Virus record (IMG/VR): IMGVR_UViG_3300030385_002649
Location: 62,001-126,000 of that record
Direction: 5' to 3' (one strand)
DNA: 64,000 nt
Shown here one piece after another: positions 2-60,720 of this stretch. Each line of letters starts with the position of its first letter. The first letter of the stretch is position 1. A program made the translations under genes and the position numbers. The notes under the pieces were generated by a model, which saw nothing but the letters and a program-made list of their open reading frames with translations, was not told where the DNA came from and searched no databases.

Positions 2-118
2 GTGTTTTACACGGCTGACATGGTCACATCTGGCACGACGATTATAAAAACAAGATCCGGATGCCTTACTGACAAAATCTGGTATTCAGCACTTTTAGGA
101 GCCAACAATATACAATGA
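2..118 (+). CDS. 5'-truncated small ORF carrying the W-x-S motif of the microprotein family
   Basis: Frame open from the window edge: VFYTADMVTSGTTIIKTRSGCLTDKIWYSALLGANNIQ*. WYSAL resembles WYSAEIL of 10172..10381. Its TGA overlaps an ATG at 115. Confidence 0.45.
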   Translation: MFYTADMVTSGTTIIKTRSGCLTDKIWYSALLGANNIQ

Positions 119-542
119 ATATGTATGATTACAACAACGAAGGTAAAATGCACCTCTAGCCGATATCATTCGAGGCTGGCTTCAAGAGACCTGTCCTGAC
201 TTAACCGTAGTTAAAAACGTCTACGCTAAGCTCCACCTCAAATCAACAATCAACAATCAACAATCAACAATCAAAGAGCATGACTGGCTTCACCTTAACA
301 TAATTGTCAGCAGAGCAACGCTCAACCCCAAGATTATGATCACTGTGGATCGTGATGGCGATGACGAAGTCATGTATTTTCACGAGTTTGTGATTATTGG
401 AGACGGAATCAAGGACTGTAACAATCCTGATGACATCAATTTCGCTTACGACGACGCTTTTCTTGACCGATTTAAGGTTGAGATCGATAAGATCGTAAGC
501 GGAGAATGGTTCGACCAATCCGGGGTCGACGCTGTATCTTGA
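115..542 (+). pseudogene. Probable hypothetical gene with an apparent 2-nt frameshift near 153-159 (track reports only 336..542)
   Basis: ATG115 frame (MNMYDYNNEGKMHL) stops at TAG157-159. The 336..542 frame is open back to 147 (LADIIRGWLQETCPDLTVV...) with no ATG before 336. Removing one CT from cacCTCTagcc joins the two. Confidence 0.4.
241..275 (+). repeat. 7-bp tandem repeat (AATCAAC)x4 + AATCAAA
   Basis: Read directly at 241-275. Confidence 0.95.
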
Positions 543-37756: not shown

Positions 37757-38200
37757 ATGAACGAAATTGACACAGTATCCCTCGAATATATGCTAATTCA
37801 TGAAGACGCTATTCTTCCAAGTAAGAAACGCCAAGAAGATGCTGGATATGACATCTACACAATTGAAACTAAGATCATTCCGGCTAGGAGTATCTTATCA
37901 TTTAGCACTGGTATTAGAGCGGCGTGCCCTTTAGGCTGGTTTATGAGCATTCGTGGCAGATCCAGTCTTGGGTTTAAAGGGATCAAACCATTTATCGGTA
38001 CATTAGACGCAGGCTACAATGGAGAACTAAAAGTCTTGCTAGAAAATTTTGGAGATGAGCCTTACCAAGTAAATAAGGGTGACAGAATTGCTCAACTAAT
38101 CTTAGAGCGTCAAACAGAAGTAAAGTTTGTTGAAATAGAAGAGTTCTCTCCAGAGTACAACAAGCGCGGAACTGATGGATTCGGAAGCAGTGGAAAATAA
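37757..38200 (+). CDS. dut: trimeric dUTPase
   Basis: AGYD, GRSSLG, GTLDAGYNGE, GDRIAQL, RGTDGFGSSG. Confidence 0.95.
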   Translation: MNEIDTVSLEYMLIHEDAILPSKKRQEDAGYDIYTIETKIIPARSILSFSTGIRAACPLGWFMSIRGRSSLGFKGIKPFIGTLDAGYNGELKVLLENFGDEPYQVNKGDRIAQLILERQTEVKFVEIEEFSPEYNKRGTDGFGSSGK

Positions 38201-38535
38201 TGCTAATAATCGTATACGCTAGAATAATCGACAACAAGAAGAACGGTCTAGAGATGGAAGGGCCATTCCTTGGTCCGGAGTCTTCGACTATGGAAGAAGC
38301 ACATGCTCATTGCTCAGATCTAGTGACTGAAAGCAAGAATCATACTATTGTTCGTATTTATAACTTGGATGAGTTTAGCGAAAAGGGCGCTTTGGAAAAG
38401 GCCACCGAAAGCTTTGATAAGATCTATTCGGATATGCAACGAGCTTCTCGTATTATTGAGAAGCCCATTATTAAACGAAAAAGAAAAAAGAAGATTGTCG
38501 CTAGTACGCCTAGCGTTGTTCCCCAAAAAAGTTAA
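38200..38535 (+). CDS. hypothetical protein (111 aa)
   Basis: TAATG overlap with dut. Confidence 0.65.
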   Translation: MLIIVYARIIDNKKNGLEMEGPFLGPESSTMEEAHAHCSDLVTESKNHTIVRIYNLDEFSEKGALEKATESFDKIYSDMQRASRIIEKPIIKRKRKKKIVASTPSVVPQKS

Positions 38536-39277
38536 TATCTTCCGAAATTAACCTTGCGATGCTGGTTATGTTCCTGGAAATACTCTCGAATTCGATCTCT
38601 TCCTCTTGGGGCATGAGATCTTCTTCTGGTTGAGCAGGACCGGGTTCCCCACCTGGTGGTGGTTCTAGGTCGTCTAGACCTTCTCCGTCATCTGGTGCTG
38701 GCTCTTCTGGGAGTCCTAGATTTTCATCATCCACACCAAGTTCTCCCATGTCTGGGAGTGCGTCTTCTTCTTCCTCTGGTGGTTCTTCGACTTTGTCGAT
38801 TTTAACCACTGTGATCATTGGAAGAATGTCTTTACGCTTAATTTTAGAGTTAGGCCCGACGTCAATCTTTTGGTGACTAACTTCGAGACCTAACTCTCCA
38901 CGCACAGCATTGCCGAATTCTTTGTTCATGGCTTGGTAAAGGTTAACCTTTAGCTCATGCTCAAATTTATGCCTTATCTCTTGGTCTTCTAATTGCTTAG
39001 ATAGACGTTGTGCGAGGTCGCGCTGCTGTTGGATGTCGGGACAATGTAAGGATACGTTTTTGATGATGAAACCTGGTGGAATGAGCTTAACGGTCAGTCT
39101 CTTGATATCAAGCTCGCATCCATTGTCCTCGGCCACCTTTTTTAGAAGCCCGACCACATTATAGTAGTCGGACAATTCTAAACAGGATTCCCTTTTCCAG
39201 GCATCTGAGTACGCAGACATAACATTAGGATCCTCTGTTAAGAGTACAGCGATTTCCCTAATTTTATTATCTGCCAC
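38510..39277 (-). CDS. probable virion/head protein, acidic Pro-rich C-half, LTEDP motifs
   Basis: IAVLLTEDPNV at the N-terminus and IARLISEDINF at the C-terminus. Confidence 0.7.
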   Translation of the reverse strand: MADNKIREIAVLLTEDPNVMSAYSDAWKRESCLELSDYYNVVGLLKKVAEDNGCELDIKRLTVKLIPPGFIIKNVSLHCPDIQQQRDLAQRLSKQLEDQEIRHKFEHELKVNLYQAMNKEFGNAVRGELGLEVSHQKIDVGPNSKIKRKDILPMITVVKIDKVEEPPEEEEDALPDMGELGVDDENLGLPEEPAPDDGEGLDDLEPPPGGEPGPAQPEEDLMPQEEEIEFESISRNITSIARLISEDINFFGEQR

Positions 39278-39288
39278 AGATGGTTCCC

Positions 39289-39783
39289 TTATCTGCGCCT
39301 GCGAGGACGAGGACGACGACCGCTAAAGACATCTGGGTCTTCAGTCAGTAAGTTAGCGATGCGATTGACGCTTTCGCCATAACATTCGCCAGCAACTTCT
39401 TCGCCACCGCCGAAGTCATCAAGACCTTCCTCAGTGTCATCGAGGTCGAGTGCTGCGTCTCCGTCAGCTTCTAGACCACCCATTTCGTCTCCGCCGAGAT
39501 CAAGGCCACCTTCGTCGCCTCCACCAGCTAGAGCGCCCCAGGCACTATCTACTGCACTCATGACTGCGTCTTCGAACTCTTGGCGAGTACACGTTACGCT
39601 TTCTTCTTCTTCGGCTCCGAGGTCGTCGCCCATGTCACCCATCTCTTCGTCTCCGCCGAGATCGAGGCCGCCTTCGTCGCCTCCGAGGTCCATGTCGTCG
39701 TCGCCTTCGTCGCCCATGTCTAGATCGAAATCATCGTCCATTTCATTCATAGGTCCCATTCCGATACCGCCCATTCCAGTCAT
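39289..39783 (-). CDS. very acidic Gly/Asp/Met-rich protein (scaffold-like) with DLGGDE repeats
   Basis: GGDEGGLDLGGDE twice; C-terminal IANLLTEDPDVF + poly-Arg. Confidence 0.7.
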   Translation of the reverse strand: MTGMGGIGMGPMNEMDDDFDLDMGDEGDDDMDLGGDEGGLDLGGDEEMGDMGDDLGAEEEESVTCTRQEFEDAVMSAVDSAWGALAGGGDEGGLDLGGDEMGGLEADGDAALDLDDTEEGLDDFGGGEEVAGECYGESVNRIANLLTEDPDVFSGRRPRPRRRR

Positions 39784-39844: not shown

Positions 39845-39869
39845 TGTAGCTCTTATACAAAGAGCTACA
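39845..39869 (-). terminator. hairpin spanning the stop codon of the 938-aa gene
   Basis: TGTAGCTCTT-ataca-AAGAGCTACA (10-bp stem); weak T-tract. Confidence 0.45.
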
Positions 39870-42681
39870 CTGACCGCCCAGCTTGATGCAATAACTTAAT
39901 TATTAAACTAAAAGACTTAGGATCCAAAAGACTAGTTGTTTCACCAACTTGATTAGGATTGTGACTTTGCTCACTCGTATTTTGTTTTACGAATTGTGCA
40001 AGATTACCATTAGAAACAGCCTTCAAGAGTCCTCCTAATAAATAATAAGTCTCGACTGACATATTGCCGTTATTGTGCGTCTTCTCAACATACTGATAAA
40101 ACGCTTTCATGGCTTCAGGTTTTGCGATGCCGGAGGATTTAACAGCATTGAGAATAACAGATTGTTTTCTTCTTGCCTCACGAGTGCTCGGGGTGGCCAA
40201 AGGCGCTTTACTTCTTATCCTTTCTTTTTCCTGATGATCTTTACTATGTCCTAAGGACCGCGTGACAAGGTCTTCATCCTTCTCATCTTCAGACTTAAAT
40301 ATGTCCTTCTCAGCTTGAGCCATCCTATTATTGGTTTTATTGCCCATAAAGTTCTTGTTTTTATACGCTTTATGCCCTCCAGCTTTATTGATAGTATTAA
40401 TTGCCGTCTTAAAGTGCTTGTGGTTCCCCAGTCCGTCTTCTTTGTCATTTAAAGAATTCTTGACAAATTCTATAAGGTTGTTTTCTCCCATAGCTTTCGA
40501 AACTTTATACATTAGGCTATAAGCCTCAGTAGATAAAGACTGTCCCAAATTACGATGAAGAAAATTATCAAAGCTGCGCCTAGCTTTAGGAGACGCAGCT
40601 ATTCCAGACAGTTTGACTGCGTCTAAGAAAACCTTTTGTGCTCTAGATTCTTTTTCCCTTTTTGGAGCCTTTTCTCTAAAGCGAGCCTGCCTACCAGCTG
40701 TAAAATCACCAGCGCCTGGCTGATCCGAAGCGAATTCCCTTTTCTTTTGGGCCAATTCTTTAGGACTCAACACACTCCCCCTGACGTCTTTGCCCCATGC
40801 GGCCTGGCCTTTTCTCTTGGCAATTTTCTGATCTTTATCCTTAGCTGTTTGTTCAGCCTTCTCTAGCTCATCAGGATTAGTGGCTTGTAAAGCCTCACGA
40901 GCTTCTTCTCCGCCTCTCATCTTGACATATTCTTGATAGGCTGGAGAGCCGGATTTTTTCAAAACCCTATGTAACATGCCAGGATCTCTAGCAAGAGACT
41001 TAGCAAGCTTCTGATATATTAACGACATTTGAGCAAGACGAATGTCCGCTTTTGAAAGAGGGCCTCCAAAAGCTTTAGCGATTGCCTTCAATTTCTTCTC
41101 TAATATCATTTCCTCGACGGACTTTTCAAGAATAACCCTATCAATGGACTCATTCACTTGAGACGATCTTTGATATTCAACAACACGAGCTGTCACAAAA
41201 TTGAGGATGTCATTAAAATCCACAACTTTGTTCATGTCTTTAACATCACCATTAGAATACTTCATCAAAAGCTGAGGTTTCCTAGCGACTTTTAATAATG
41301 TTTCAAGATCCTTATTAGCAAGAGACGAAATGATGCCAGAGAGGCTCCCATTATCACTTGGATCAGCCCTTTGGTAAGCTTTTAGAAGGCGGTCTTTAGG
41401 TGTACCGCCGATATACTGTGTAAAGTACGCTCTTGCATTGCCAGGGGTTTCTTCAGTTTTAGAGACAGCATGTCTTAGATTAGGAGAAAATAATTGATTA
41501 TATTCCTGCGCTGCCTGAGCGTCTTCCCCGCTCTTGGCCATATTGCTTGCTGCAGACAAGTATTCCCAGACGTGACTTTCATTAGGAGATTCTATGTTCG
41601 TCCAATAAGGCGCGGAAAGGTCAATGTTAGCGAACTTATAAGCTGGTATTTTAGTGCCATCTGGGCCTTTTTTAAGCCCTCTAACCCTTACAACCAAATT
41701 AGTTGGAGCACGCTTGATGATGTCGATTCTTTTTCTAGCGTGCTCCGAGGCTTTTTGATCGTTTTGAGCCTCAATAGACCCTCCAACTTCGACGCCGTCG
41801 TCACGGGCGTCAGACTTGACAGGCCCTCCGACTGTTCCTTTTGGCTTTTCTTTACTAAACGCCTTAGCGCCTCTCGCCAGATTTCTAGCTTTAACATCTT
41901 CTGGATTAAATTGCAGACCGCGATTTTTCTGCTTGATTGGTGAACCCGGCTCAACATTAGGCTCAGTTGGTCTGGGTGATGCTTTAACTTTAGACTTACG
42001 GTCGCTGAGACTTTGGTTCCTATCTAGTCTAGGAGTCGCTCTAATTTTTTCAATTTCGCTCTGAGTTGGATCTTCGGATTCTTCCTCTTCAGGTGCTTCT
42101 TCAGCCTGCTCTATACCAAGCTGTTTAGCGTAACCTTTGAAAAAATCATTGTTGATACCTATGCTCTTAGCGTCAGAAGACGTTAAGAGACCATAAAATC
42201 CTCCGAGCTGGTTCTTAAAGTTCTCATTGTCTAAAAGATCTGGATTTTCAACTATATTGCCCCAGAGGTCTTTGCCAAATCCAGAAGCGGCCTTAGCCAG
42301 AGCCTTGGTCACCTTTCCTTTTGCGCTATTTCCTCCCCATGACCTTGCAAGAAGAGTAGCAATTTTATCGCGTTTGCTAGGGTTTAGAATGTCCGAGAAG
42401 AATCCGATTAATCTTAGGGAATTTTCGCTATCGCCAGCTTTTAGAACTGCGTCGTGGACTCTCTTGAACCCACCTTTTTCTTTTAGCATGCCGTTGATTA
42501 TGCCGACGCTGGACATTTTTCCTTTTAGCAAGGCACTTAGTGCTTCTACCTTACCAGTATAAGGTGTAGTAGGTTCCTTATCATCTTCTTCTTTGAGAAG
42601 GTCCATATACTCATTGACGATAGAGCTTGCAACAACCCCATTTTCAATGAATGATTTATTAAGCTTGTCTAGAAAATCCAT
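39865..42681 (-). CDS. large basic hypothetical (938 aa), probable internal head/ejected protein
   Basis: Several [ILV]-x-E sites (FIE, VNE, LKE, ILE); duplicated ~65-aa C-terminal unit. Confidence 0.75.
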   Translation of the reverse strand: MDFLDKLNKSFIENGVVASSIVNEYMDLLKEEDDKEPTTPYTGKVEALSALLKGKMSSVGIINGMLKEKGGFKRVHDAVLKAGDSENSLRLIGFFSDILNPSKRDKIATLLARSWGGNSAKGKVTKALAKAASGFGKDLWGNIVENPDLLDNENFKNQLGGFYGLLTSSDAKSIGINNDFFKGYAKQLGIEQAEEAPEEEESEDPTQSEIEKIRATPRLDRNQSLSDRKSKVKASPRPTEPNVEPGSPIKQKNRGLQFNPEDVKARNLARGAKAFSKEKPKGTVGGPVKSDARDDGVEVGGSIEAQNDQKASEHARKRIDIIKRAPTNLVVRVRGLKKGPDGTKIPAYKFANIDLSAPYWTNIESPNESHVWEYLSAASNMAKSGEDAQAAQEYNQLFSPNLRHAVSKTEETPGNARAYFTQYIGGTPKDRLLKAYQRADPSDNGSLSGIISSLANKDLETLLKVARKPQLLMKYSNGDVKDMNKVVDFNDILNFVTARVVEYQRSSQVNESIDRVILEKSVEEMILEKKLKAIAKAFGGPLSKADIRLAQMSLIYQKLAKSLARDPGMLHRVLKKSGSPAYQEYVKMRGGEEAREALQATNPDELEKAEQTAKDKDQKIAKRKGQAAWGKDVRGSVLSPKELAQKKREFASDQPGAGDFTAGRQARFREKAPKREKESRAQKVFLDAVKLSGIAASPKARRSFDNFLHRNLGQSLSTEAYSLMYKVSKAMGENNLIEFVKNSLNDKEDGLGNHKHFKTAINTINKAGGHKAYKNKNFMGNKTNNRMAQAEKDIFKSEDEKDEDLVTRSLGHSKDHQEKERIRSKAPLATPSTREARRKQSVILNAVKSSGIAKPEAMKAFYQYVEKTHNNGNMSVETYYLLGGLLKAVSNGNLAQFVKQNTSEQSHNPNQVGETTSLLDPKSFSLIIKLLHQAGRSV

Positions 42682-42881
42682 TACTTAGACTTACCCTTCT
42701 TCTTTTTTTTCTCGCCTTGAATGACGTTTAAGAACCTATCACGATCTTCATGACCACCTTTTAAGTGGCTCAAATTGCTTCGGCCCTTAACTTTAGGCTT
42801 GGCTTTACCTTTTGGATCCCCGTAGAAATCTTCTGAGGATTGGATGACATCGAGATCTTCGTACAACTTATTTAATTTCAT
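42681..42881 (-). CDS. small basic protein with MKLNKLYE leader
   Basis: ATG42881 overlaps the upstream TGA (ATGA); track start 42917. Confidence 0.7.
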   Translation of the reverse strand: MKLNKLYEDLDVIQSSEDFYGDPKGKAKPKVKGRSNLSHLKGGHEDRDRFLNVIQGEKKKKKGKSK

Positions 42882-43948
42882 CCTGGGTACTTGAACTGTT
42901 CCTTGAGTGGAACGCAAGTTCCCCTTCTTTCGTCAACAATAGCGGCACCAGCTGGTTCTTTGCTATTGTAACGGTTCTTAGATTCATTGAAAGCGCCAAG
43001 GTTTTTCTTGCGCCCACTTGGAACGTCCGTCCAACCGCATTCAACCATAGTTACGCCAGGCTTGTTTCCAGCGTCCTTCATGTCAGCCTCGATGAGGCCC
43101 TCATTAGAATCAACGGACATCATGTCAAGACCAAGGCCACCGCTACCCTGCGTTTTCAATCGGTTAATGTCATCGACAGAGATTTCTAGTTTATGCCTAA
43201 GATCACGATCAGTAACGATCATATACTTGAGAGGCTTTCTTCCAGAATCACCGGCTTTAATGTGTGACATGAGACCAAGAGCACCATTTACTGAATCGGA
43301 GATCCCAAAAGAGATTGTTGGTTGTACTCTTCTTTCTGGAGACCATCCCTCATGGTGGAAACCTTGACCAGCCAGAGTGTTGGACATTAGAATACAACGT
43401 TTAATAACGTCAGCGAAAATCCTCTGTGCCCTATCCTTGTCCGTATCACCCACATAGACGCTGACGGCGAATGTATCACCACCCAATCGGTAACACTCTG
43501 CTCTACTTGAACCGCCAAATTGGCTAGTGATGAGGTTTCCGATATATCCAATGACTGAATTGACTCCAATAGTTCCTAGACCGCTCTTTTCGTTAAGGTG
43601 CCTAGCATCGTCAACGTCGCCAACAACATAAATGAAGTTTTTCAGACCGTTTTCGTTGACATCATCGCTCGCCTCAGCATGCAGGGCCTTGAAAACGTGC
43701 CCGCCCTTTAAGCCAGTTACCACGTCTTTTTCTACTAGGTCTCTTAGCTCTTTATAAGCACTACCCGGGTTAGACTTGGACAAATCGTCTAGTCTTTCTA
43801 ATTCCTCGCACATATTGATGGCTAGGGAATTTTCTACTGGCCTATGTCCTGATACCGGTGGGTACCTGATAGGGTCTAAAGGAAGGTCTGAACTTTCTTT
43901 TAGTACTCCTCGGTAGCTTCTCTTGCCGTATAGGTCTTCTAATTTCAT
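42878..43948 (-). CDS. GGDEF-like (diguanylate-cyclase fold) protein with MKLEDLY leader
   Basis: DVVTGL, GDVDDARHLNE..G, YRLGGDTFAV, TISFGIS. Confidence 0.8.
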   Translation of the reverse strand: MKLEDLYGKRSYRGVLKESSDLPLDPIRYPPVSGHRPVENSLAINMCEELERLDDLSKSNPGSAYKELRDLVEKDVVTGLKGGHVFKALHAEASDDVNENGLKNFIYVVGDVDDARHLNEKSGLGTIGVNSVIGYIGNLITSQFGGSSRAECYRLGGDTFAVSVYVGDTDKDRAQRIFADVIKRCILMSNTLAGQGFHHEGWSPERRVQPTISFGISDSVNGALGLMSHIKAGDSGRKPLKYMIVTDRDLRHKLEISVDDINRLKTQGSGGLGLDMMSVDSNEGLIEADMKDAGNKPGVTMVECGWTDVPSGRKKNLGAFNESKNRYNSKEPAGAAIVDERRGTCVPLKEQFKYPG

Positions 43949-43974: not shown

Positions 43975-45272
<1,298 letters not shown>

Positions 45273-45273
<1 letters not shown>

Positions 45274-48200
45274 TAGCTGCCACCGAATCCACCTCCGCCA
45301 AAGTCTTCTCCGCCAAAATCATCGTCCACAGTAACTGTACCGCTAGTTACGTTACGAATTTCAAAAGCTATGTCATCGACAATATTGTTGTCTAAGAAGA
45401 AAGCGAAAGGATTGTTAAATGTTTCATCACCACATCCGAATGTGGTCTGAAATCTTTTTATTTCTTGAGAGCCACCTTCAGCAAGGACCATAAAGCCCTG
45501 ATCGGTAACCTGAATAATCTGACGTTCTACAGTCTCAACTCCGTCTTTAAAGACGCGACGGTTGATAACCTCACCAGATATTTCTTGGCCAGGGACCCTA
45601 GGGTCTTGGACCTGGAGTGTGTAGTCCAACCTGTCGTTGAACGTTTCGAAGATTACTCTATAAATAATGCCATAATCATCGATGAACTTAAATGACCCTT
45701 CTTGAGGGAATCGTTCATCGAAGTCCGTGAGAGGCCCACTGAATACCTCTTTTTCATCCTCGAACATCATCATGTTATTAATGGCGCCGTCCATAATGCA
45801 GGTCTGAGCGCGATATTGCTCATCCAGAATCATTGTGGAGATCAAGTCGACTCTATCACAGTTAAAATCATATGATCCGTCTGGAAGTTCGAAATGGCTT
45901 AAGTGACATCTTTCGATTGTGAGGGTTTCTGGTTCTGCTGTGACATCCGCACTGGTTCCCGTTCCCGTTCCGCCCGAATCGTCTGGGCATTCGAAACTCG
46001 TGCAGCCACAGTCCATTCTGTGTGGCCTATAATCTTCATAATCAAAATCACCAGGTCTGACGCGGACGCCAGAGCCCAGCCTAAATCTTAAAGAAGGGGC
46101 CCCTTCTCCAGTGACAATCAGAGGAAGTCCGAGAGCGATAGCTGGGCCCAATATCGTAATCCCGCCTTCAGCGCTATACAAGTCCTCGTCATATAACGAG
46201 AAACCATACCCTTCAATAGTCTCCCTTGGGAAATCGAAGTCCGTCAGATCTTCCATGTAAGAGCCGAATTCCGCAGGGTATCCGTCGATAAAGTCCGCGC
46301 CCCCGGTTGGCGTCACGCCACCCGTGATGGCTGTCGGGTCGGCTCCGGTTGTTTCGATATTTTCGAGATCCTGTGCTGTCCACACGTCATCCCCTTCAGG
46401 ACATGGGCAGTTACGATCCGCAGACTCGAAAATCGGGTCCTGGAGATCAGTGAAACAAATGAAGTTCTTCTGCTCCCCAAGAGCCTCCTCAGAGAATCTA
46501 AGAGCATCGCTTTTATGGTCGATAGCGTAGACAGGTTGACTACCAAGAGAAAAACCAGTGCTATAACAGAGGCCAGGATCTGCAGAAGACCAAACCGAGT
46601 GCGTCACATCATTCTGAGGGATCAAAGACCCATCATGAACGTCCATGTTTGGAATGTCCGCTGCGATGCCATTTCCGACATAGATCAGATCAGCGTCATC
46701 ATAAGCGATGACTTCCTCTCCGTCAGTTCCAATTTCAATCCTAGCGTTAATTTCCGGAACAGTCAATCCTGATGGGACATCTTCTGGACAATCGTAGTTG
46801 AACACATAATCCCAAGGACGCAACCGATACTCAGGGTGGTTCAGATCACTGATAAGATTGGCCATTGAAACAAACCGATGGCCAGGATAAAACATGTTAT
46901 CCTTGTCAATTTCAAGAGACGGTCTACGAGTGGCGAAGAACCTATTGTTAATAGTGTCTTCGATGTCATCTACGTATGCCCTATCAGTATAATGCAATTC
47001 AGGATTACTGAAAGCCATGACTCTAGTATAACCCTGGTCATGCCCGCTCCGGCGATAATTGGCTATGTTGGTTAAGTCAGGAGCGTTAGGGCCTTGATCC
47101 CCACATGAGAATTCATCGTTTTGTATGAGCGGTGTTAAATAATACAGCCCCAGCCCTGGCATTAGGTCGCAAGGACGGCATCTCCAGGACTCCGGAAGAA
47201 TCATGGTCAGTTCGGTCTCAGCAACCTGTTCTACTCTGCCCTTATAGCAATAGTCGGCAACGTTATTTTCAACATCACAGAGCTTGGCACGATCATCTTC
47301 AAAGTGATCAAAGTCTTTCTCTCCATTGCTGACAATTCTGTCTTGTCCGAAAGGGTTAAACTGGCAAGAATCGCCATCTGGTTGTCTAATTTGGATTCTT
47401 GAGGCCGATTGTAGAATTGGGAGAAGAGCGTCTGGAACTTCATGAGTCCCGTCTAAGTTCTTCCATGCTGCATGTTCTTGCTCGAGGAGGTCGAGGATTT
47501 CATCTCTGTGGTCTGTATCGGAGCCTTTGAAGCCTCTATCTAATGAGAACTCCGAACAGACGAAATCTGGATCATCCAGGTCGGGGATGTCGTTAGGGAT
47601 AACCGGAGGGGGTATTTGGATGTTTCCGAGATCGCTATCTGCGTCTTGGGCTAAACGGCCTCCAACACAGAAATCTTGAACGTTATAAATCTCTGGACAT
47701 TCGACTGTGAAGGTGATTTTTCTGAGCAACGAGTGGAATGCCTTGAACTTGAACAAGAATTCAAGAAGGAACTCGTAGACGTCTGATGTTGGTTGTTCCC
47801 CATTCTTGAACAACAAAATGTTAATGTCGAAGCGGTTGCTTCTCAAATCGGCCAACGCTGTAGGAAGAACGATCTTAGTTCTTTCATACGTGGCAAAGAC
47901 GTAAACCACTGTATCTCTATCGAACGAGAAATAATGGTCTAGGTCTAGGCTTACTTCATTAGTGTCAGGATTAAATCCAATACCTTCAGTACTAACAACA
48001 GGAATTCCACGTTGTGTTTCGTCGATACCTCCAACATCTTGTGAAATCAGAACGGTCGAATGACCGATTGACCCTACAGCAATTGACTCTTGAAAGTCCG
48101 ATAATTGGAAGCCTTCTGGAGTCAGAGAGCATCTTCCGGTGCTGAAAGACTCTACGTCAGTAGCAGTAGCATCCAAGGCATTTTGGAGGGCTATTTCTTG

Positions 48201-49409
48201 CGGTGTTCCTCTTGTCACAAAATAAGCATCAAGAGTGATATTACCAAGAGCTTTGAATAAAAGTGGAACGGTTAGTTGTCCGAAGCCTGGAGAGGAATAA
48301 TCGGCTATCAGAGGCTCGGAGACGCATAGCGTTTCTGTCGTGATCTCTTGATCTTCAATATCGCTTGGCAGTTGCTCGTCTGGAGCAATGAACCTTTGTC
48401 CATCCTTGCTAAACCATAAGTTAGCAACATCGATAGTGAATCCGAAAATATCGAAAAGTTCCCTAATCGCCCTCTTGGACCCTTTTAGTTGTTGGAGTTT
48501 TCTGCCATTTCTCAACATTGAACGGCGAACTTGGTCCGTTGTGCTTGGGAAATACGGTAGATCCAACCCGATGAGGTTGGCTAGGTACGGGATGTACTGC
48601 ACTGGGATCTTATCGATCCAGTTAACGCCTCTTAATAGTTCTTGCTCGTCGAAAATGTCCTGAAGGGCATCTGCGAATGGCCTATAGAAAGCAACTGTTC
48701 CGTCTTTGTCAATCGATGGGCTGTTAAAATAGAGCGCTGGGCTCCTGCGGATCATTGCGAAGTGAAGGTCGCCCGGGTGATTGATATAACTTGAAAAACG
48801 TGACTTGATAGCGCGGCTAGTATCAATACAAACCAATTCGCCGTTGGATGAAATGATTCTCTTGTAGTAAGAGCATTCCCAAACGAAATTGTACTTTCCT
48901 TCTGGGAGATCTACAGTCTCAATAATGAACGGAGTAACGTCATAATAATCGGCATCGTAATAATATGGAATTCTGTCTTTTGAACCTGGCCCTGATCTGC
49001 CGAATGCGCCGATGACGCCTCTCATTAGAGTGATCTCCATGAGGTCGCCGTTGTTGACGTCGCTATAAGTTTTTTCGTCTCCTGTTGCTGGATCGAAAAA
49101 GCGTTGGCCTGTGACGTCTATCTTTACTGATGACAGTTCTTCTGTACTAACTTCTCTTCTGAATCTTTCAAAGTTCGGTACGAAGATTCCTTGGTTTTGA
49201 ACTCCAGCTACTGGAACCTTTCCGGGTGCGTCTTCAATGTAGAAAGCGCAGTCGGTGAGGCCAGTGTCATTGATCGGAATACCGTCAATAGTACGCCTAA
49301 ATGGTACTACAAGCACTAACGGCAGGTTTACAGGCTGATAACCTGTCCTGTTTGTATTGATTGGAAATAATGAGAAGGTAGGTTGGTACCTATCAACAAC
49401 TTCTGCCAT
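45273..49409 (-). CDS. large baseplate/tail protein with P2 gpI-like segment (1378 aa)
   Basis: [15 protein letters not shown]...[30 protein letters not shown] typical of baseplate wedge proteins. Confidence 0.75.
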
Positions 49410-53147: not shown

Positions 53148-53944
53148 TAAGACACCCCTCCCCTATTGACATCATGTTTGTTAAGTATAATTATCGAAGC
53201 GCCATCTGACGGGACAAAAGGAAGAGGATCAATCAAATCAATTTGTCCCGTTGAGAAATACTGGTCTATTTGGCGAGTTGCCACATTATTTCCAACTGAA
53301 TCAATGACAATTATAGAAGAATCGTCATAATATCCGTCGGGTTTAATTAATAACGTTTGTAAGGACGAGTTTGTGCTCACATTGGTACCAGCATTATCAA
53401 CCATGCTTGTGCCTGAAATTATAGCATCCTGTAAATTTAAAACAACATCTCCGATCGATCCAGCGATAATGCTATTAACGCTAACGTCCCAAACAGCCTG
53501 AGAAATTTCAGCAGCTGTTATTGTAGCTTCAACAAGGTTATCAACAACCAGAGTAGAAACTGTTGAAGTAGCAAAGGGAACATCCCCAACCGTAATAAAA
53601 GGAGGGTCGCCGGACTCGGTGAAAAGGTTACCAGTGAAGTTGATACCGTGATCCAACACAATGCGCCAGCCGTTAATAAGGAAGAACGTTCTTCCTAGAA
53701 ATTCACCGCCGGGCAACGGGTCACCACCAGTTGACCTAAAAGCAGCGACCCACTTCATGTTGATCGCGCTCGCGATCAACATCCATTCTTTCCATGCGGA
53801 ATAAAGGTCGATTCTAACGTCAATTTCGGTAATATCAATAGGTATAGTTATAAGACGGTTAAAACCATCAAAGTTGACTTTATGAGCTAAATCCCAAAAG
53901 TCCCAGAAGTATCCATAGGTATGATGCATAACACTAGATATCAA
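53147..53944 (-). CDS. probable virion structural protein (265 aa)
   Basis: DLYSAWKEW...GGDPLPGG...FFLINGWRI resembles a segment of 55566..58310. Confidence 0.7.
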   Translation of the reverse strand: MISSVMHHTYGYFWDFWDLAHKVNFDGFNRLITIPIDITEIDVRIDLYSAWKEWMLIASAINMKWVAAFRSTGGDPLPGGEFLGRTFFLINGWRIVLDHGINFTGNLFTESGDPPFITVGDVPFATSTVSTLVVDNLVEATITAAEISQAVWDVSVNSIIAGSIGDVVLNLQDAIISGTSMVDNAGTNVSTNSSLQTLLIKPDGYYDDSSIIVIDSVGNNVATRQIDQYFSTGQIDLIDPLPFVPSDGASIIILNKHDVNRGGVS

Positions 53945-55553
53945 TCCCTGTAAAGCTAAATTTTACTGTAGTATCACCTGCTGTAGGCTCTAAGGATTCC
54001 ATTGTTATTGTTAAATTATCTTGGCTATCGTCAGCATTTAATCTGCCAGCAGTGCCAAGAAGATTGAAATTTGGCGGCATGGGCAAATTATGGCCGCCAG
54101 GAGCCAAATACCAATCATATATTAAGTATCCTCCGCCAAATGTACCAGTTAAATTAACATCTCCCGCATTGTCAATGTCTATTTGACTCCATACCCCACC
54201 AGTTACAGTAGAGAATGTGTACATTTGAATATGGCACGCCTGTCCGGTAACAAAACATCTTAACGATTCAGGAACAATCGTCTTATTGTTCCTAATCCCA
54301 TTTATTGCCAATGTTGGTCGCCAAGATGCAGCAAAAGCCTCTCCACTAAATGTTCCAGCGCTTTTTACTGTCCATTTGACAGATCGCCTCTCTAAAGTAG
54401 GAACAATCTTTCCTTCCACTTCAACTTGAGCGCAAGTAAGCTTTAGCCTACTTGGGCTCACGACAGGAGTTATGTTCTCTATTTCTAATCTAATTGGCAA
54501 CGTGCCAGAAGTCATATAAGGGCGATCTAATGAGTTTGGGTTATGAAAATCATGTATTAAGATTCTCTCTCCAGCAGGCGAGAAAATCCCAAAGCGTACA
54601 CGGCCAGCGCCGAGCCAGGCAAAGTCAATCCAGTAAATGTTGACATTTGTTACATCTAGCAGAACATTGCTGGCATTGGCCTCGTCCCTACTGCCATCAA
54701 GTTTGTCTTCCCCCCAGCTGCCTTGAAGCACTCTAGTTTCTATTACAGACCCAGATGTGTTCGACCTTTGAACTACACAAAGGTCGGCGCCAAGTTGCTC
54801 AAAATACAACCCATTAAAATCATCGAAATACCCCCAACGCCTACGAAGCCCAGCCTTCCCGTTATCTCCACATGTGACAGTCATCTCAATAAGCTGTCCA
54901 AATCCAGGCTGGTAAATGTGGTAACGGTCTGTAGTAGATCTTACCATATCGCCAGAATCTATACCTATATCTAATGCAATGGAAGACTCATCTGGTAAAT
55001 GAGTAACATCTACTGCTGGAGCTGTCCCACTTACCTCGTGGCTCCACTCTGTGCTATCCATATCATAGTGAAAAGTATAAGCAGCCAGCTGTTCGCTAGG
55101 GGCTACTTTAGATGCTCCGAAAGCACTTAATTGTTGAGAACCGTCAGTAAATCTAACAAAAGCTGACCCATTTCTGTCAACTCTTTGCCCGAATGTTGGA
55201 TTATTGGCTCCAAGCACAATGTGGCCTGGAGGGTAAAATGGGATACTAGTTGTAACTTCGGCGTACTTGGTAGCATTAACATTTAAATCGTCATTGGGCG
55301 TAACATCTTGGACCGTAGATGTTATGCTGGGATTTACATAGATTGTGCCGCTAGCAGTTAAATTGCCAGGTCTTAGAGCTATTACTGTTCCAACGAAGTT
55401 ATTTCCTGGTGCTGTAATTTCATCATCAACAACGAAGTCTGTGACGCCGTTCTTGTAATCTATAGCTAGATATACACCTGTGACCATCCTCTTGCCAGCT
55501 CCATCTGGCGGGATTCTGATATAAGAATTTGGTCCAGTGTCGAGATCTGCCAT
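53934..55553 (-). CDS. phage virion structural protein (539 aa)
   Basis: YQPG...WGYFD..NGLYFE...W.EDKLDG...IYWIDFAWLGAGRVRFG, a pattern I recall from uncultured tailed-phage proteins. Confidence 0.75.
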   Translation of the reverse strand: MADLDTGPNSYIRIPPDGAGKRMVTGVYLAIDYKNGVTDFVVDDEITAPGNNFVGTVIALRPGNLTASGTIYVNPSITSTVQDVTPNDDLNVNATKYAEVTTSIPFYPPGHIVLGANNPTFGQRVDRNGSAFVRFTDGSQQLSAFGASKVAPSEQLAAYTFHYDMDSTEWSHEVSGTAPAVDVTHLPDESSIALDIGIDSGDMVRSTTDRYHIYQPGFGQLIEMTVTCGDNGKAGLRRRWGYFDDFNGLYFEQLGADLCVVQRSNTSGSVIETRVLQGSWGEDKLDGSRDEANASNVLLDVTNVNIYWIDFAWLGAGRVRFGIFSPAGERILIHDFHNPNSLDRPYMTSGTLPIRLEIENITPVVSPSRLKLTCAQVEVEGKIVPTLERRSVKWTVKSAGTFSGEAFAASWRPTLAINGIRNNKTIVPESLRCFVTGQACHIQMYTFSTVTGGVWSQIDIDNAGDVNLTGTFGGGYLIYDWYLAPGGHNLPMPPNFNLLGTAGRLNADDSQDNLTITMESLEPTAGDTTVKFSFTGIDI

Positions 55554-60345: not shown

Positions 60346-60720
60346 TTAAGTACAACTAATTAGATTAATCAACAATCCTAATAGTTGTTTTACTTCTGAT
60401 CTCGAAACAGGACCATCGTCTTCTTTAATCTCGTTGAACCGGGCCCTAGCGCCTTGGACGCCAGCTTGCTCCATGCCTTTAAGCATTTGTTCAACCCATT
60501 GATTGTCTTTAAAATTGCCAAGTTCTTTAGCGCCGTCAATGAATTTAACTTTGGTATCCTCTGGAATCCCTCTGTTCTTTTCGTCATCATCAATAGTGAT
60601 TGTTATTTTGGCTTCGTTTAAAACCCCGGCGCCTGACTTCAAGACATAATCCTGAAGCTTGGACATATATTCCAAGAAAACCTTTTTGTCAGTCTCCTTA
60701 TATAATTTATCCAGTTTCAT
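60346..60720 (-). CDS. hypothetical with MKLDKLY leader
   Basis: MKLDKLYKE...FLE...VLNEA. Confidence 0.7.
   Translation of the reverse strand: MKLDKLYKETDKKVFLEYMSKLQDYVLKSGAGVLNEAKITITIDDDEKNRGIPEDTKVKFIDGAKELGNFKDNQWVEQMLKGMEQAGVQGARARFNEIKEDDGPVSRSEVKQLLGLLINLISCT

What the first reader, a model, noticed from the sequence alone, without database searches (positions are those of the whole stretch)
42878..43948. GGDEF-fold nucleotide cyclase with altered signature, among head genes and carrying the putative packaging leader
Seen: DxxTGL, the DVD metal site, N of NE, and RLGGDTF (GGDEF to GGDTF). The guanine-binding Asp of the canonical GD motif is replaced (GVN) and the RxxD I-site is absent. 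Inference: an unregulated, possibly virion-delivered cyclase making c-di-GMP or a different nucleotide signal, to reprogram surface or motility or to jam cyclic-nucleotide immunity.
Basis: partly seen in the sequence, partly recalled or inferred. Interest (0 to 1): 0.68.

Follow-up and report, generated by a model that had tools for sequence, protein, structure and literature searches.

The report
Divergent GGDEF-fold protein in jumbo phage
A marine T4-like giant phage encodes a diverged relative of bacterial diguanylate cyclases with a leader peptide suggesting virion packaging, but this copy lacks the glutamate those enzymes need for catalysis, so its activity is doubtful.

Summary
ORF 42878-43948(-) encodes a 356-aa protein whose residues about 54-248 are a GGDEF domain: hhalign against canonical GGDEFs gives 99.1% probability, E 1.3e-18; VIA-align gives Z 15.4; all top 50 Foldseek PDB hits are diguanylate cyclases.

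The protein belongs to a rare clade, about 14 full-length members among 1.84 billion representatives. In the five relatives whose contigs have enough flank, the gene sits in the same operon, after a giant P2-gpI-like tail protein and overlapping a small basic ORF by 4 bp.

"Among head genes" is not supported. The upstream neighbours are tail-type, and the capsid protein and prohead protease genes lie about 52 kb away.

The "leader" is real. Eleven unrelated proteins of this phage start M[KR]L..L[YH], against 0.2 expected. The phage has a T4 gp21-type protease, and family-conserved L-x-E sites lie near both ends of the protein. Packaging is inferred from this, not shown.

The family's catalytic residues are conserved. 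However, this copy and its sister have Thr or Ser where all other members have the general-base Glu. It is therefore unlikely to be a canonical c-di-GMP synthase, and whether it is active at all is open. I rate it a new variant of a known kind, of moderate interest.

The parts
42878..43948 (-). Gene for the 356-aa GGDEF-fold protein (P0001), stop codon included
   Evidence: ORF list and translation. Family profile, hhalign and structure searches.
43895..43948 (-). N-terminal leader, residues 1-18: MKLEDLYGKRSYRGVLKE. It ends in L-K-E, the L/I-x-E motif cut by T4 gp21-type proteases.
   Evidence: M[KR]L..L[YHFN] opens 11 of 561 ORFs in the phage, against about 0.2 expected and a maximum of 3 in 2000 shuffles. 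Codons differ between copies, so the signal is in the peptide. The start and a following [LI]-x-E are kept in all family members with a complete N-terminus. Cleavage and targeting are inferred.
43205..43789 (-). Stalk helix plus GGDEF (palm) domain, residues 54-248
   Evidence: VIA-align model range 54..247 against DgcB 6ttr, Z 15.4, rmsd 3.4 A, 173 residues aligned. hhalign covers residues 59-228.
43559..43618 (-). DVDDARHLNEKSGLGTIGVN, residues 111-130. It holds metal-binding D111 (with D113), R116 at the canonical Lys position, N119, T126 where family and canon have His, and N130 at the position of the guanine-binding Asp.
   Evidence: Alignments to DgcR 6zxb and to canonical GGDEFs. Residue table.
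43469..43489 (-). Signature hairpin RLGGDTF, residues 154-160. D158 is invariant in the family. T159 (codon ACA) replaces the general-base Glu.
   Evidence: Role of the Glu: PMC6456294.
42881..43204 (-). Family-specific C-terminal extension, residues 249-356. It ends in the near-invariant P-L-K-E motif (347-350), seven residues from the end.
   Evidence: Conserved in all 14 full-length members. No known fold was found: the model is poor when folded alone (pLDDT 58) and the Atlas search gave no usable hit.
42681..42881 (-). 66-aa basic ORF. Its ATG overlaps the GGDEF gene's stop (ATGA), and it begins with the same leader (MKLNKLYE).
   Evidence: Junction sequences in the window, L001 and L002. 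The same 4-bp overlap is seen in L007 and L009. Alignment A4 has invariant M1 K2 L3 L6 E8.
39865..42681 (-). 938-aa Lys-rich protein of unknown fold, next gene of the conserved operon. Relatives are 530-1408 aa.
   Evidence: Synteny in L001, L002, L003, L007 and L009. No family or Atlas hit.
38510..39783 (-). Two acidic proteins (164 and 255 aa) carrying IAxLLTEDPxV-type motifs within about 25 residues of their termini
   Evidence: A reading as gp21-type propeptide sites is inferred.
43975..45273 (-). Collagen-like tail fibre protein, immediately upstream (26-bp gap)
   Evidence: Pfam Collagen 4.9e-10; PHROG tail fibre families down to 3.5e-21. Intergenic sequence.
45273..49409 (-). 1378-aa protein with a P2 gpI-type baseplate domain. 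It lies upstream of the GGDEF-like gene in every relative whose upstream flank is held.
   Evidence: Pfam Tail_P2_I 1.2e-10. The same neighbour occurs in L001, L007 and L009.

Best explanation
The gene encodes a diverged member of the GGDEF (diguanylate-cyclase palm) superfamily. It belongs to a small clade confined, as far as can be seen, to marine T4-like giant phages.

It is transcribed with the late structural genes. It is translationally coupled to a small basic protein.

It carries an N-terminal peptide (MKLxxLY...LxE) of the kind that T4-like phages use to load diverse proteins into the prohead core, where the gp21-type protease trims them. The most likely life history is therefore: made late, loaded into the capsid, trimmed after E18 and perhaps after E350, and delivered into the next host with the DNA.

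The clade as a whole looks enzymatic. It probably works as a dimer held by the stalk helix, binding NTP-Mg through D111, D158 and K231. An Asn replaces the guanine-specific Asp, so GTP specificity is not expected.

The window's own copy has remodelled the hairpin: H126T, H154R, H156G, E159T. It lacks the general base of GGDEF chemistry. I therefore expect it not to make c-di-GMP. It either catalyses a different or much slower nucleotidyl transfer, with metal-activated attack as in class III cyclases and minimal CRISPR polymerases, or it only binds nucleotide.

Shown: fold, homology, motif states, synteny, gene overlap, leader recurrence, presence of the protease gene.
Inferred: late expression, packaging, cleavage, dimerisation, any catalysis.
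For: Fold and homology:
- hhalign probability 99.1%, E 1.3e-18.
- Profile hits to true diguanylate cyclases.
- Foldseek and VIA-align tops are all GGDEF domains.

Enzyme-like conservation:
- D111, D113, D158, F160, T211, F214 and K231 are invariant, and N119 and N130 nearly so, across 14 members at 21-48% identity.
- P0001 and P0002 are sisters (96/85 support). They share only about 50% identity in the domain, yet both keep all of these residues.

Remodelling is focused on the active site:
- P0001 departs from the >=80% family consensus at only four positions. Three of them (T126, R154, T159) line the active site.

Activity without the full GGDEF motif has precedent:
- OptS mCpol keeps two Asp, has the GGDEF motif 'nearly absent', and makes 2',3'-c-di-AMP (PMC12657218).

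Base specificity:
- The position of N130 sets base choice in GGDEF enzymes; Asp gives GTP, and Ser gives GTP or ATP (PMC6456294).

Operon:
- The order P2-gpI giant, GGDEF-like, 57-71 aa ORF with 4-bp overlap, then a large protein, is conserved in the related contigs.

Leader:
- 11 N-termini carry it against 0.2 expected, at peptide level.
- The phage has Peptidase_S77 and a Gp23-type capsid protein.
- gp21 cuts after L/I-x-E, and a 10-residue CTS loads unrelated proteins into T4 heads (PMC9026906; PMC3012670).
Against: - The fourth hairpin residue is Thr. In GGDEF enzymes that Glu is the proposed general base and E->Q is dead (PMC6456294).
- The Lys of DxDxFK is not conserved in the clade.
- The first Gly is His in most members, outside the known active [G/A/S]G[D/E]E[F/Y] set quoted in PMC6456294.
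- There are no proteomic, transcript or biochemical data. No RNA run holds the sequence.
- The leader is not uniformly followed by Glu at position 8 (5 of 11 copies). In P0001 the first L-x-E is at residues 16-18, so cleavage is a guess.
- Recognisable neighbours are tail genes, which would fit tail association as well as head loading.
- The complex test with the coupled small protein gave no verdict.
Confidence: 0.45

Rival explanations
1. A degenerate, catalytically dead GGDEF-fold protein. In the common ancestor of P0001 and P0002 the enzyme lost its general base and two or three active-site His residues. It now serves as a structural, scaffolding or nucleotide-binding component of the virion (head interior or tail periphery), much as many bacterial degenerate GGDEF domains act as receptors or adaptors.
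For: - T159 in P0001 and S159 in P0002 replace the Glu that 12 of 14 members keep. E->Q abolishes activity in GacA, and the residue is required in canonical enzymes (PMC6456294).
- T126, R154 and G156 changed together with it.
- The gene sits inside a structural operon.
- The family-specific C-terminal extension is as well conserved as the domain, which suggests a role beyond catalysis.
Against: - Both descendants still keep every metal- and phosphate-binding residue (D111, D113, D158, K231) and both base-facing Asn residues, despite about 50% divergence. A pure structural role would not demand this.
- There is no I-site (RxxD), so the usual receptor function of degenerate GGDEFs, binding c-di-GMP, is not available.
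Confidence: 0.33
2. A canonical, constitutively active diguanylate cyclase that raises host c-di-GMP, as the first reader primarily proposed.
For: - GGDEF fold, with the stalk helix typical of dimeric diguanylate cyclases.
- R154 and G156-G157 are canon-like.
- No I-site and no sensor domain, so it would be unregulated.
- Other phages carry annotated GGDEF genes: Bacillus phage G gp350, SP-15 and Bordetella phage CN1 (PMC12484599).
Against: - The guanine-binding Asp is Asn in 13 of 14 members.
- The general-base Glu is Thr.
- His of the GH motif is Thr.
- Pfam and NCBIfam scores are far below their cut-offs.
- No c-di-GMP partner genes (EAL, PilZ) occur in the phage.
Confidence: 0.07
3. An active or inactive GGDEF-fold protein that is not packaged at all. 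It would be a late cytoplasmic protein, or a tail or baseplate-associated accessory of the P2-gpI-like giant protein. The MKLxxLY start would serve another purpose, for example recognition by a chaperone or assembly factor.
For: - Immediate upstream neighbours are tail proteins, and this adjacency is conserved.
- Only 5 of the 11 leaders have Glu at position 8.
- Head genes are about 52 kb away, and the Baseplate_J and gp25 genes about 70 kb away, so gene position says little.
Against: - In T4 the internal-protein and alt genes also lie away from the head cluster (established T4 genetics; my own knowledge).
- Leader-bearing proteins here are mostly small and basic, like T4 internal proteins.
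- Family-conserved L-x-E sites lie near both termini, matching the two-ended processing of T4 Alt (PMC9026906).
Confidence: 0.3

Closest known systems
Bacterial GGDEF diguanylate cyclases (Pfam PF00990; e.g. PleD, WspR, DgcB, DgcR, SiaD)
   Same: - Same fold, including the preceding stalk helix.
- Same order of motifs: DxxTGL, DxD, N, G-x, hairpin xGDxF, TxSFG, and the C-terminal A...K helix.
- Metal Asp, hairpin Asp and phosphate Lys are conserved.
   Different: - Asn instead of the guanine-binding Asp.
- Thr instead of the general-base Glu. The rest of the clade reads HGDEF rather than GGDEF.
- A two-residue insertion (KSGLG) before the GH position.
- No I-site and no sensor domain.
- An extra C-terminal extension of about 110 residues.
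- An N-terminal leader.
- Encoded in a phage structural operon.
Hypr GGDEF enzymes (GacA, Bd0367) that make 3',3'-cGAMP
   Same: These are GGDEF enzymes in which replacing the base-reading Asp changes nucleotide choice, with Asp at the central hairpin position (GGDEF, not GGEEF) (PMC6456294). The window protein likewise has a non-Asp residue there, and its hairpin has D at the central position.
   Different: Hypr enzymes have Ser or Thr, not Asn, at that position. They keep the fourth-position Glu and the GG.
Minimal CRISPR polymerase OptS (Panoptes), Cas10 palm domains and class III nucleotide cyclases
   Same: These are palm-domain cyclases that work with two acidic residues and without the GGDEF Glu. 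OptS has the motif 'nearly absent' yet makes cyclic dinucleotides (PMC12657218). Class III cyclases are the next-best structural matches, at Z about 10-11.
   Different: The window protein is clearly closer to GGDEF domains in both sequence and structure: Z 15 against 10, and profile hits only to GGDEF. It matches no PADLOC model.
T4 internal proteins and Alt, head-packaged and injected proteins loaded by a capsid targeting sequence (CTS)
   Same: - A short N-terminal peptide shared by otherwise unrelated, mostly small basic proteins.
- L/I-x-E sites.
- A gp21-family protease in the genome.
- An enzyme (Alt) among the cargo.
(PMC3012670, PMC9026906)
   Different: - The leader sequence differs: MKLxxL[YH] against the T4 CTS.
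- No experimental evidence of loading or cleavage exists here.
- The cargo would be a nucleotide-cyclase-fold protein, which I have not seen described for T4-like phages (four literature searches).
Annotated phage GGDEF proteins (Bacillus phage G gp350, Bacillus phage SP-15, Bordetella phage CN1)
   Same: Phage-encoded GGDEF-fold proteins, and the best BFVD structural matches.
   Different: There is no detectable sequence relationship at the tblastn level: no hit in 50,697 phage records. Those proteins are annotated as ordinary diguanylate cyclases (PMC12484599). Their gene context and leaders were not examined.

Membership tests
GGDEF domain superfamily (PF00990 fold) | Palm fold with the topology of diguanylate cyclase domains | tested here: met
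   AlphaFold model pLDDT 75.7. VIA-align Z 15.4 to DgcB, with the top 30 matches all GGDEF. All top 50 Foldseek matches are GGDEF.
GGDEF domain superfamily (PF00990 fold) | Significant sequence-profile relationship to PF00990 members | tested here: met
   hhalign 99.1%, E 1.3e-18. The family profile hits canonical diguanylate cyclases at E 1e-7. Relative P0004 passes the Pfam cut-off at 27.2 bits. The window protein alone does not: 13 bits against a cut-off of 23.8.
Active diguanylate cyclase (c-di-GMP synthase) | Signature [G/A/S]G[D/E]E[F/Y] with the fourth-position Glu (general base) | tested here: not met
   The hairpin is G156-G-D-T159-F. The requirement for the Glu is from PMC6456294.
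Active diguanylate cyclase (c-di-GMP synthase) | Guanine recognition by Asn (of ND) and Asp (of GD) | tested here: not met
   N119 is present, but the Asp position is N130.
Active diguanylate cyclase (c-di-GMP synthase) | Metal-binding Asp on strand 1 and an acidic third hairpin residue | tested here: met
   D111 and D158 are invariant in 14 of 14 members.
Active diguanylate cyclase (c-di-GMP synthase) | Formation of c-di-GMP from GTP by a dimer | not testable with these tools
   This needs biochemistry.
Product-inhibited diguanylate cyclases (I-site) | RxxD five residues before the hairpin | tested here: not met
   The sequence is GGSSRAECYRLGGDTF. The family consensus also has no RxxD.
Hypr GGDEF (cGAMP synthases) | Ser or Thr at the base-reading position, together with GGDE[F/Y] | tested here: not met
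   The position is Asn, and the hairpin lacks Glu (the definition is from PMC6456294).
T4-type capsid-targeted internal proteins | Short N-terminal targeting peptide shared by unrelated proteins of the same phage | tested here: met
   11 of 561 ORFs carry it against 0.2 expected. Codons differ between copies.
T4-type capsid-targeted internal proteins | gp21-family prohead protease in the genome, and L/I-x-E at the end of the leader | tested here: met
   Peptidase_S77 at 69.9 bits. L16-K-E18 is conserved as [LI]-x-E in all complete N-termini.
T4-type capsid-targeted internal proteins | Presence in the virion and cleavage of the leader | not testable with these tools
   No cultured relative and no proteome are available. 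The source is a marine metagenome.
Class III nucleotide cyclases / mCpol / Cas10 palm | Closer in sequence or structure to these than to GGDEF | tested here: not met
   Class III cyclases score Z 10-11 against 15 for GGDEF. No PADLOC hit.

The most novel reading that the evidence does not exclude
T4-like giant phages of the sea load a GGDEF-derived nucleotide synthase into the capsid through a capsid-targeting leader and inject it with the DNA. Its product would not be c-di-GMP, because Asn replaces the guanine-reading Asp and the hairpin resembles a class III cyclase. The product would act in the first seconds of infection on host second-messenger circuits, for example by supplying or mimicking the nucleotides that CBASS, type III CRISPR or Panoptes-type systems read. 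That would be the first virion-delivered cyclic-nucleotide enzyme.
Probability: 0.12. Interest if true: 0.85.

Novelty: new variant of a known kind. Interest (0 to 1): 0.5.

Why it matters
GGDEF enzymes are among the commonest bacterial signalling enzymes. Phage copies are usually filed as ordinary diguanylate cyclases.

This clade differs in four ways:
- It is phage-specific.
- It is locked into a structural operon.
- It carries a leader shared with about ten other proteins of the phage.
- It has changed exactly the residues that read the base and activate the nucleophile.

If the clade is active and packaged, it would extend the T4 idea of injected proteins (Alt, IPI*) to nucleotide second messengers. 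It would also give a natural series for asking what GGDEF chemistry can do without its general base: HGDEF in most members, GGDTF here and GSDSF in the sister P0002.

Separately, the MKLxxL[YH] leader offers a way to predict the injected proteome of an uncultured giant phage.

If the window's copy is dead, it is an ordinary case of a degenerate enzyme fold reused in a virion.

Tried and rejected
- tblastn of the protein against 50,697 GenBank phage records found no match.
- An IMG/VR scan with the family alignment found no further relatives.
- PHROGs gave only weak hits to families of unknown function.
- PADLOC gave nothing. NCBIfam gave only sub-threshold diguanylate cyclase hits.
- phmmer of the single sequence against PDB sequences gave nothing. 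The family profile did reach DgcR, at E 2.7e-4.
- The complex prediction of the protein with the translationally coupled 66-aa protein gave no verdict, score 0.00. It counts neither for nor against binding.
- The C-terminal extension folded alone gave pLDDT 58 and pTM 0.30, too poor to search with. The Atlas search of that part gave only sub-0.9 feature hits and TM below 0.45.
- The Atlas search of the 938-aa neighbour gave no usable hit.
- The T4 late-promoter consensus TATAAATA is not enriched in the window (3 found, 1.8 expected) and does not occur near the gene.
- I considered a nucleotide-level explanation of the leader, as a shared DNA or RNA element. I rejected it because synonymous codons differ among the 11 copies.
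- My first, over-strict patterns for an 'LLTED'-type motif missed most copies. A looser search was used instead.
- The sequencing-run search found only the source marine sample and no RNA runs.
- The tree joins the canonical outgroup next to P0001 and P0002, but this is a flagged long-branch join with weak support (82/78). I draw no rooting from it.
Full report
**What is there**

The window is bases 62001-126000 of a 370,804-bp virus record with direct terminal repeats, a complete giant phage genome. The only public runs that hold the sequence are from one marine metagenome sample.

The phage is T4-like. It has a Gp23-family major capsid protein (265 bits) at genome position 157329-158567. It has a gp21-family prohead protease (Peptidase_S77, 69.9 bits) at 159867-160301.

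The finding's ORF is exactly as stated: 42878..43948 on the minus strand, 356 aa.

**Checking the observation**

- DVVTGL (residues 75-80)
- DVD (111-113)
- NE (119-120)
- RLGGDTF (154-160)
- GVN (128-130), where canonical enzymes have G-D
- no RxxD before the hairpin

A single-sequence Pfam scan is only suggestive: GGDEF E 0.091, 13 bits, against a cut-off of 23.8. The relationship is nevertheless solid.
- A word-index search of 5.8 billion proteins found three relatives.
- A profile of those four proteins, searched against 1.84 billion representatives, found about 14 full-length members. It also found a set of 240-350-aa proteins that pass Pfam GGDEF, and then canonical diguanylate cyclases at E 1e-7 to 1e-4.
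- hhalign of the 14-member alignment against ten canonical GGDEF domains gives 99.1% probability, E 1.3e-18, with all motifs in register.
- The AlphaFold model (pLDDT 75.7, pTM 0.78) finds only GGDEF domains at the top of both structure searches. Foldseek gives E about 1e-7 for WspR, SiaD, DgcB, DgcR and PleD. An exhaustive VIA-align search gives Z 11.4-15.4 with rmsd 2.4-3.4 A, covering model residues 54-248. Class III cyclases follow at Z 10-11.

**Anatomy of the protein**

- Residues 1-18 are a leader (discussed below).
- Residues about 20-45 are proline-rich and conserved (PLEPSRYPP).
- Residues 46-72 are two helices that align with the stalk or coiled coil of dimeric diguanylate cyclases.
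- Residues 73-248 are the GGDEF domain.
- Residues 249-356 are an extension found only in this clade. It ends in a near-invariant PLKE motif. I could assign it no fold.

**State of the active site**

Across the 14 members, which share 21-48% identity with the window protein, the following hold:
- Invariant: D111, D113, G128, D158, F160, T211, F214, K231.
- Nearly invariant: N119 and N130.

These are the metal-binding Asp of strand 1, the hairpin Asp, the base-facing Asn and the phosphate-binding Lys of canonical enzymes. That pattern suggests an enzyme rather than a structural protein.

Three things depart from canonical diguanylate cyclases.

1. The Asp that reads guanine is Asn in 13 of 14 members. 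In GGDEF enzymes this position sets base choice: Asp gives GTP, and Ser gives GTP or ATP (PMC6456294).
2. The clade's consensus hairpin is H-P-H-G-D-E-F. This lies outside the known active set [G/A/S]G[D/E]E[F/Y].
3. In the window protein and its sister P0002 (a clade with 96/85 support), the fourth residue is Thr or Ser instead of Glu. All 12 other members keep the Glu. The same two proteins also changed H126 to T, H154 to R and H156 to G.

The window protein departs from the >=80% family consensus at only four positions, and three of them are these active-site residues.

The fourth-position Glu is proposed to be the cross-dimer general base of GGDEF enzymes. Mutating it to Gln abolishes activity, and earlier work had shown it is required in canonical enzymes (PMC6456294). 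The Thr codon is ACA, two changes away from any Glu codon, so this is not a sequencing slip.

There is evidence on the other side. Palm cyclases outside the GGDEF family work without this Glu. The minimal CRISPR polymerase OptS keeps only two Asp, has the GGDEF motif "nearly absent", and still makes 2',3'-c-di-AMP (PMC12657218). In addition, P0001 and P0002 have kept every other catalytic residue through about 50% divergence.

I conclude that c-di-GMP synthesis is unlikely. The clade is probably enzymatic, with a non-guanine-specific substrate choice. Whether the window's own copy is active remains open. I give roughly 40% to some catalysis and roughly a third to a dead domain.

**Context**

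The gene lies in a long run of minus-strand genes.

Upstream:
- A collagen-like tail fibre (Pfam Collagen; PHROG tail-fibre families down to 3.5e-21), separated by a 26-bp gap.
- A 1378-aa protein with a P2-gpI baseplate domain.

Downstream:
- A 66-aa basic ORF whose ATG overlaps the gene's stop codon (ATGA).
- A 938-aa Lys-rich protein.
- Two acidic proteins.
- A gene on the other strand (37757-38200) whose counterparts in related contigs are marked dUTPase.

This order recurs in five related contigs: L001, L002, L003, L007 and L009. The 4-bp overlap is kept in four of them; in L003 the small frame shows no ATG at that point. The gene is therefore a fixed part of a structural-type operon.

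"Among head genes" is not supported by anything annotatable. The capsid protein and protease genes are about 52 kb away. The Baseplate_J and gp25 genes are about 70 kb away.

The phage has no EAL or PilZ genes and no second copy of the family.

**The leader**

In this genome, 11 of 561 crude ORF calls begin M[KR]L..[LIV][YHFN]. About 0.2 are expected from internal frequency or from shuffling, with a maximum of 3 in 2000 shuffles.

The bearers are unrelated proteins, mostly small and rich in Lys and Arg. They include the coupled 66-aa ORF (MKLNKLYE) and the 124-aa ORF at 60346-60720. The codons differ between copies, so the signal is in the peptide.

The same start is kept in all clade members with a complete N-terminus and in the small GGDEF relatives. 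It is followed within 20 residues by [LI]-x-E; in the window protein this is L16-K-E18. A second family-conserved L-K-E lies at residues 348-350.

T4 offers a close precedent:
- T4's gp21 cuts after L/I-x-E.
- A 10-residue capsid targeting sequence loads otherwise unrelated internal proteins into the prohead core.
- Alt, an enzyme, is loaded and is processed at both ends.
- The CTS has been suggested as a general way for T4-like phages to load varied proteins.
(PMC9026906; PMC3012670)

The two acidic proteins downstream carry IAxLLTEDP-type motifs within about 25 residues of their termini, which would fit the same processing.

Loading and cleavage are still inferences. Only 5 of the 11 leaders have Glu at position 8.

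**Comparison with what is known**

The protein is a member of the GGDEF superfamily by fold and by profile. It fails two defining tests of an active diguanylate cyclase (the general-base Glu and the guanine-reading Asp), and it fails the Hypr definition.

Phage GGDEF genes are already annotated in Bacillus phage G, SP-15 and Bordetella phage CN1 (PMC12484599). These share no detectable sequence similarity with this clade at the tblastn level.

In four literature searches I found no description of a GGDEF-fold protein with a capsid-targeting-type leader or in a T4-like structural operon. That is absence within the searched library only.

**Verdict**

- Novelty: a new variant of a known kind.
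- Interest is moderate (0.5). The clade and its leader are new and testable, but the specific copy in this window may be catalytically compromised, and nothing shows what it does in the host.

Noticed in passing
window 6061(-), 42881(-), 43948(-), 60720(-) (start codons); genome G000 134969(-), 139578(+), 188969(-), 230599(-), 264399(-), 334001(+), 334520(-): Eleven unrelated ORFs begin M[KR]L..[LIV][YHFN], for example MKLNKLYE, MKLSALYE, MKLNALHE and MKLSHLHE. About 0.2 are expected. Most are small and rich in Lys and Arg. They may mark the phage's set of capsid-loaded internal proteins.
   Followed up: partly
window 38510-39277(-) and 39289-39783(-); genome G000 near 210654(-) and 244360(-): An 'IAxLLTEDPxV' motif recurs near the N- or C-termini of two adjacent, very acidic (D/E/G-rich) proteins, and in two proteins elsewhere in the genome. 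It contains L-T-E, which fits gp21-type cleavage. The same LLTED string opens a small GGDEF relative (P0020).
   Followed up: partly
window 42681-42881(-): A 66-aa basic protein (FYGDPK ... DRxRFL ... poly-Lys tail). It overlaps the GGDEF gene's stop (ATGA) in the window and in four relatives, and it overlaps the start of the next gene as well. The complex prediction with the GGDEF protein gave no verdict.
   Followed up: yes
window 39865-42681(-): A 938-aa Lys-rich protein with an internal repeat (two similar '...AVK.SGIA...FVK.N' segments near the C-terminus). It has no family, Atlas or structural lead. Homologues in the same operon position range from 530 to 1408 aa.
   Followed up: partly
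window 43975-45273(-): A collagen-like fibre protein with long G-x-T/G-T-G repeats. It sits between the P2-gpI-like giant and the GGDEF gene in this phage, but not in L001 or L009. L002 has a gene of similar size (433 aa) at that position.
   Followed up: no
window 53934-55553(-): A 539-aa virion structural protein (phrog_1645, 8e-69). It is shared at about 30% identity with many T4-like cyanophages (S-RIM2, S-SZBM1 and others) and with Puniceispirillum phage HMO-2011. This is a hint to the phage's marine lineage, not to its host.
   Followed up: partly
proteins P0018-P0024, P0027 (metagenomic; not in the window): Small (239-349 aa) GGDEF proteins with H[PAK][HS]GDEF hairpins and MKL/MRL starts nest inside the clade in the tree. 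They lack the C-terminal extension. One (P0020) sits next to an AbiEii-like gene on a 2.5-kb contig.
   Followed up: partly
window 37757-38200(+): A 147-aa ORF on the opposite strand. Its positional counterparts in L001 and L009 are marked dUTPase/DCD by Pfam. It marks the conserved downstream end of the operon.
   Followed up: no
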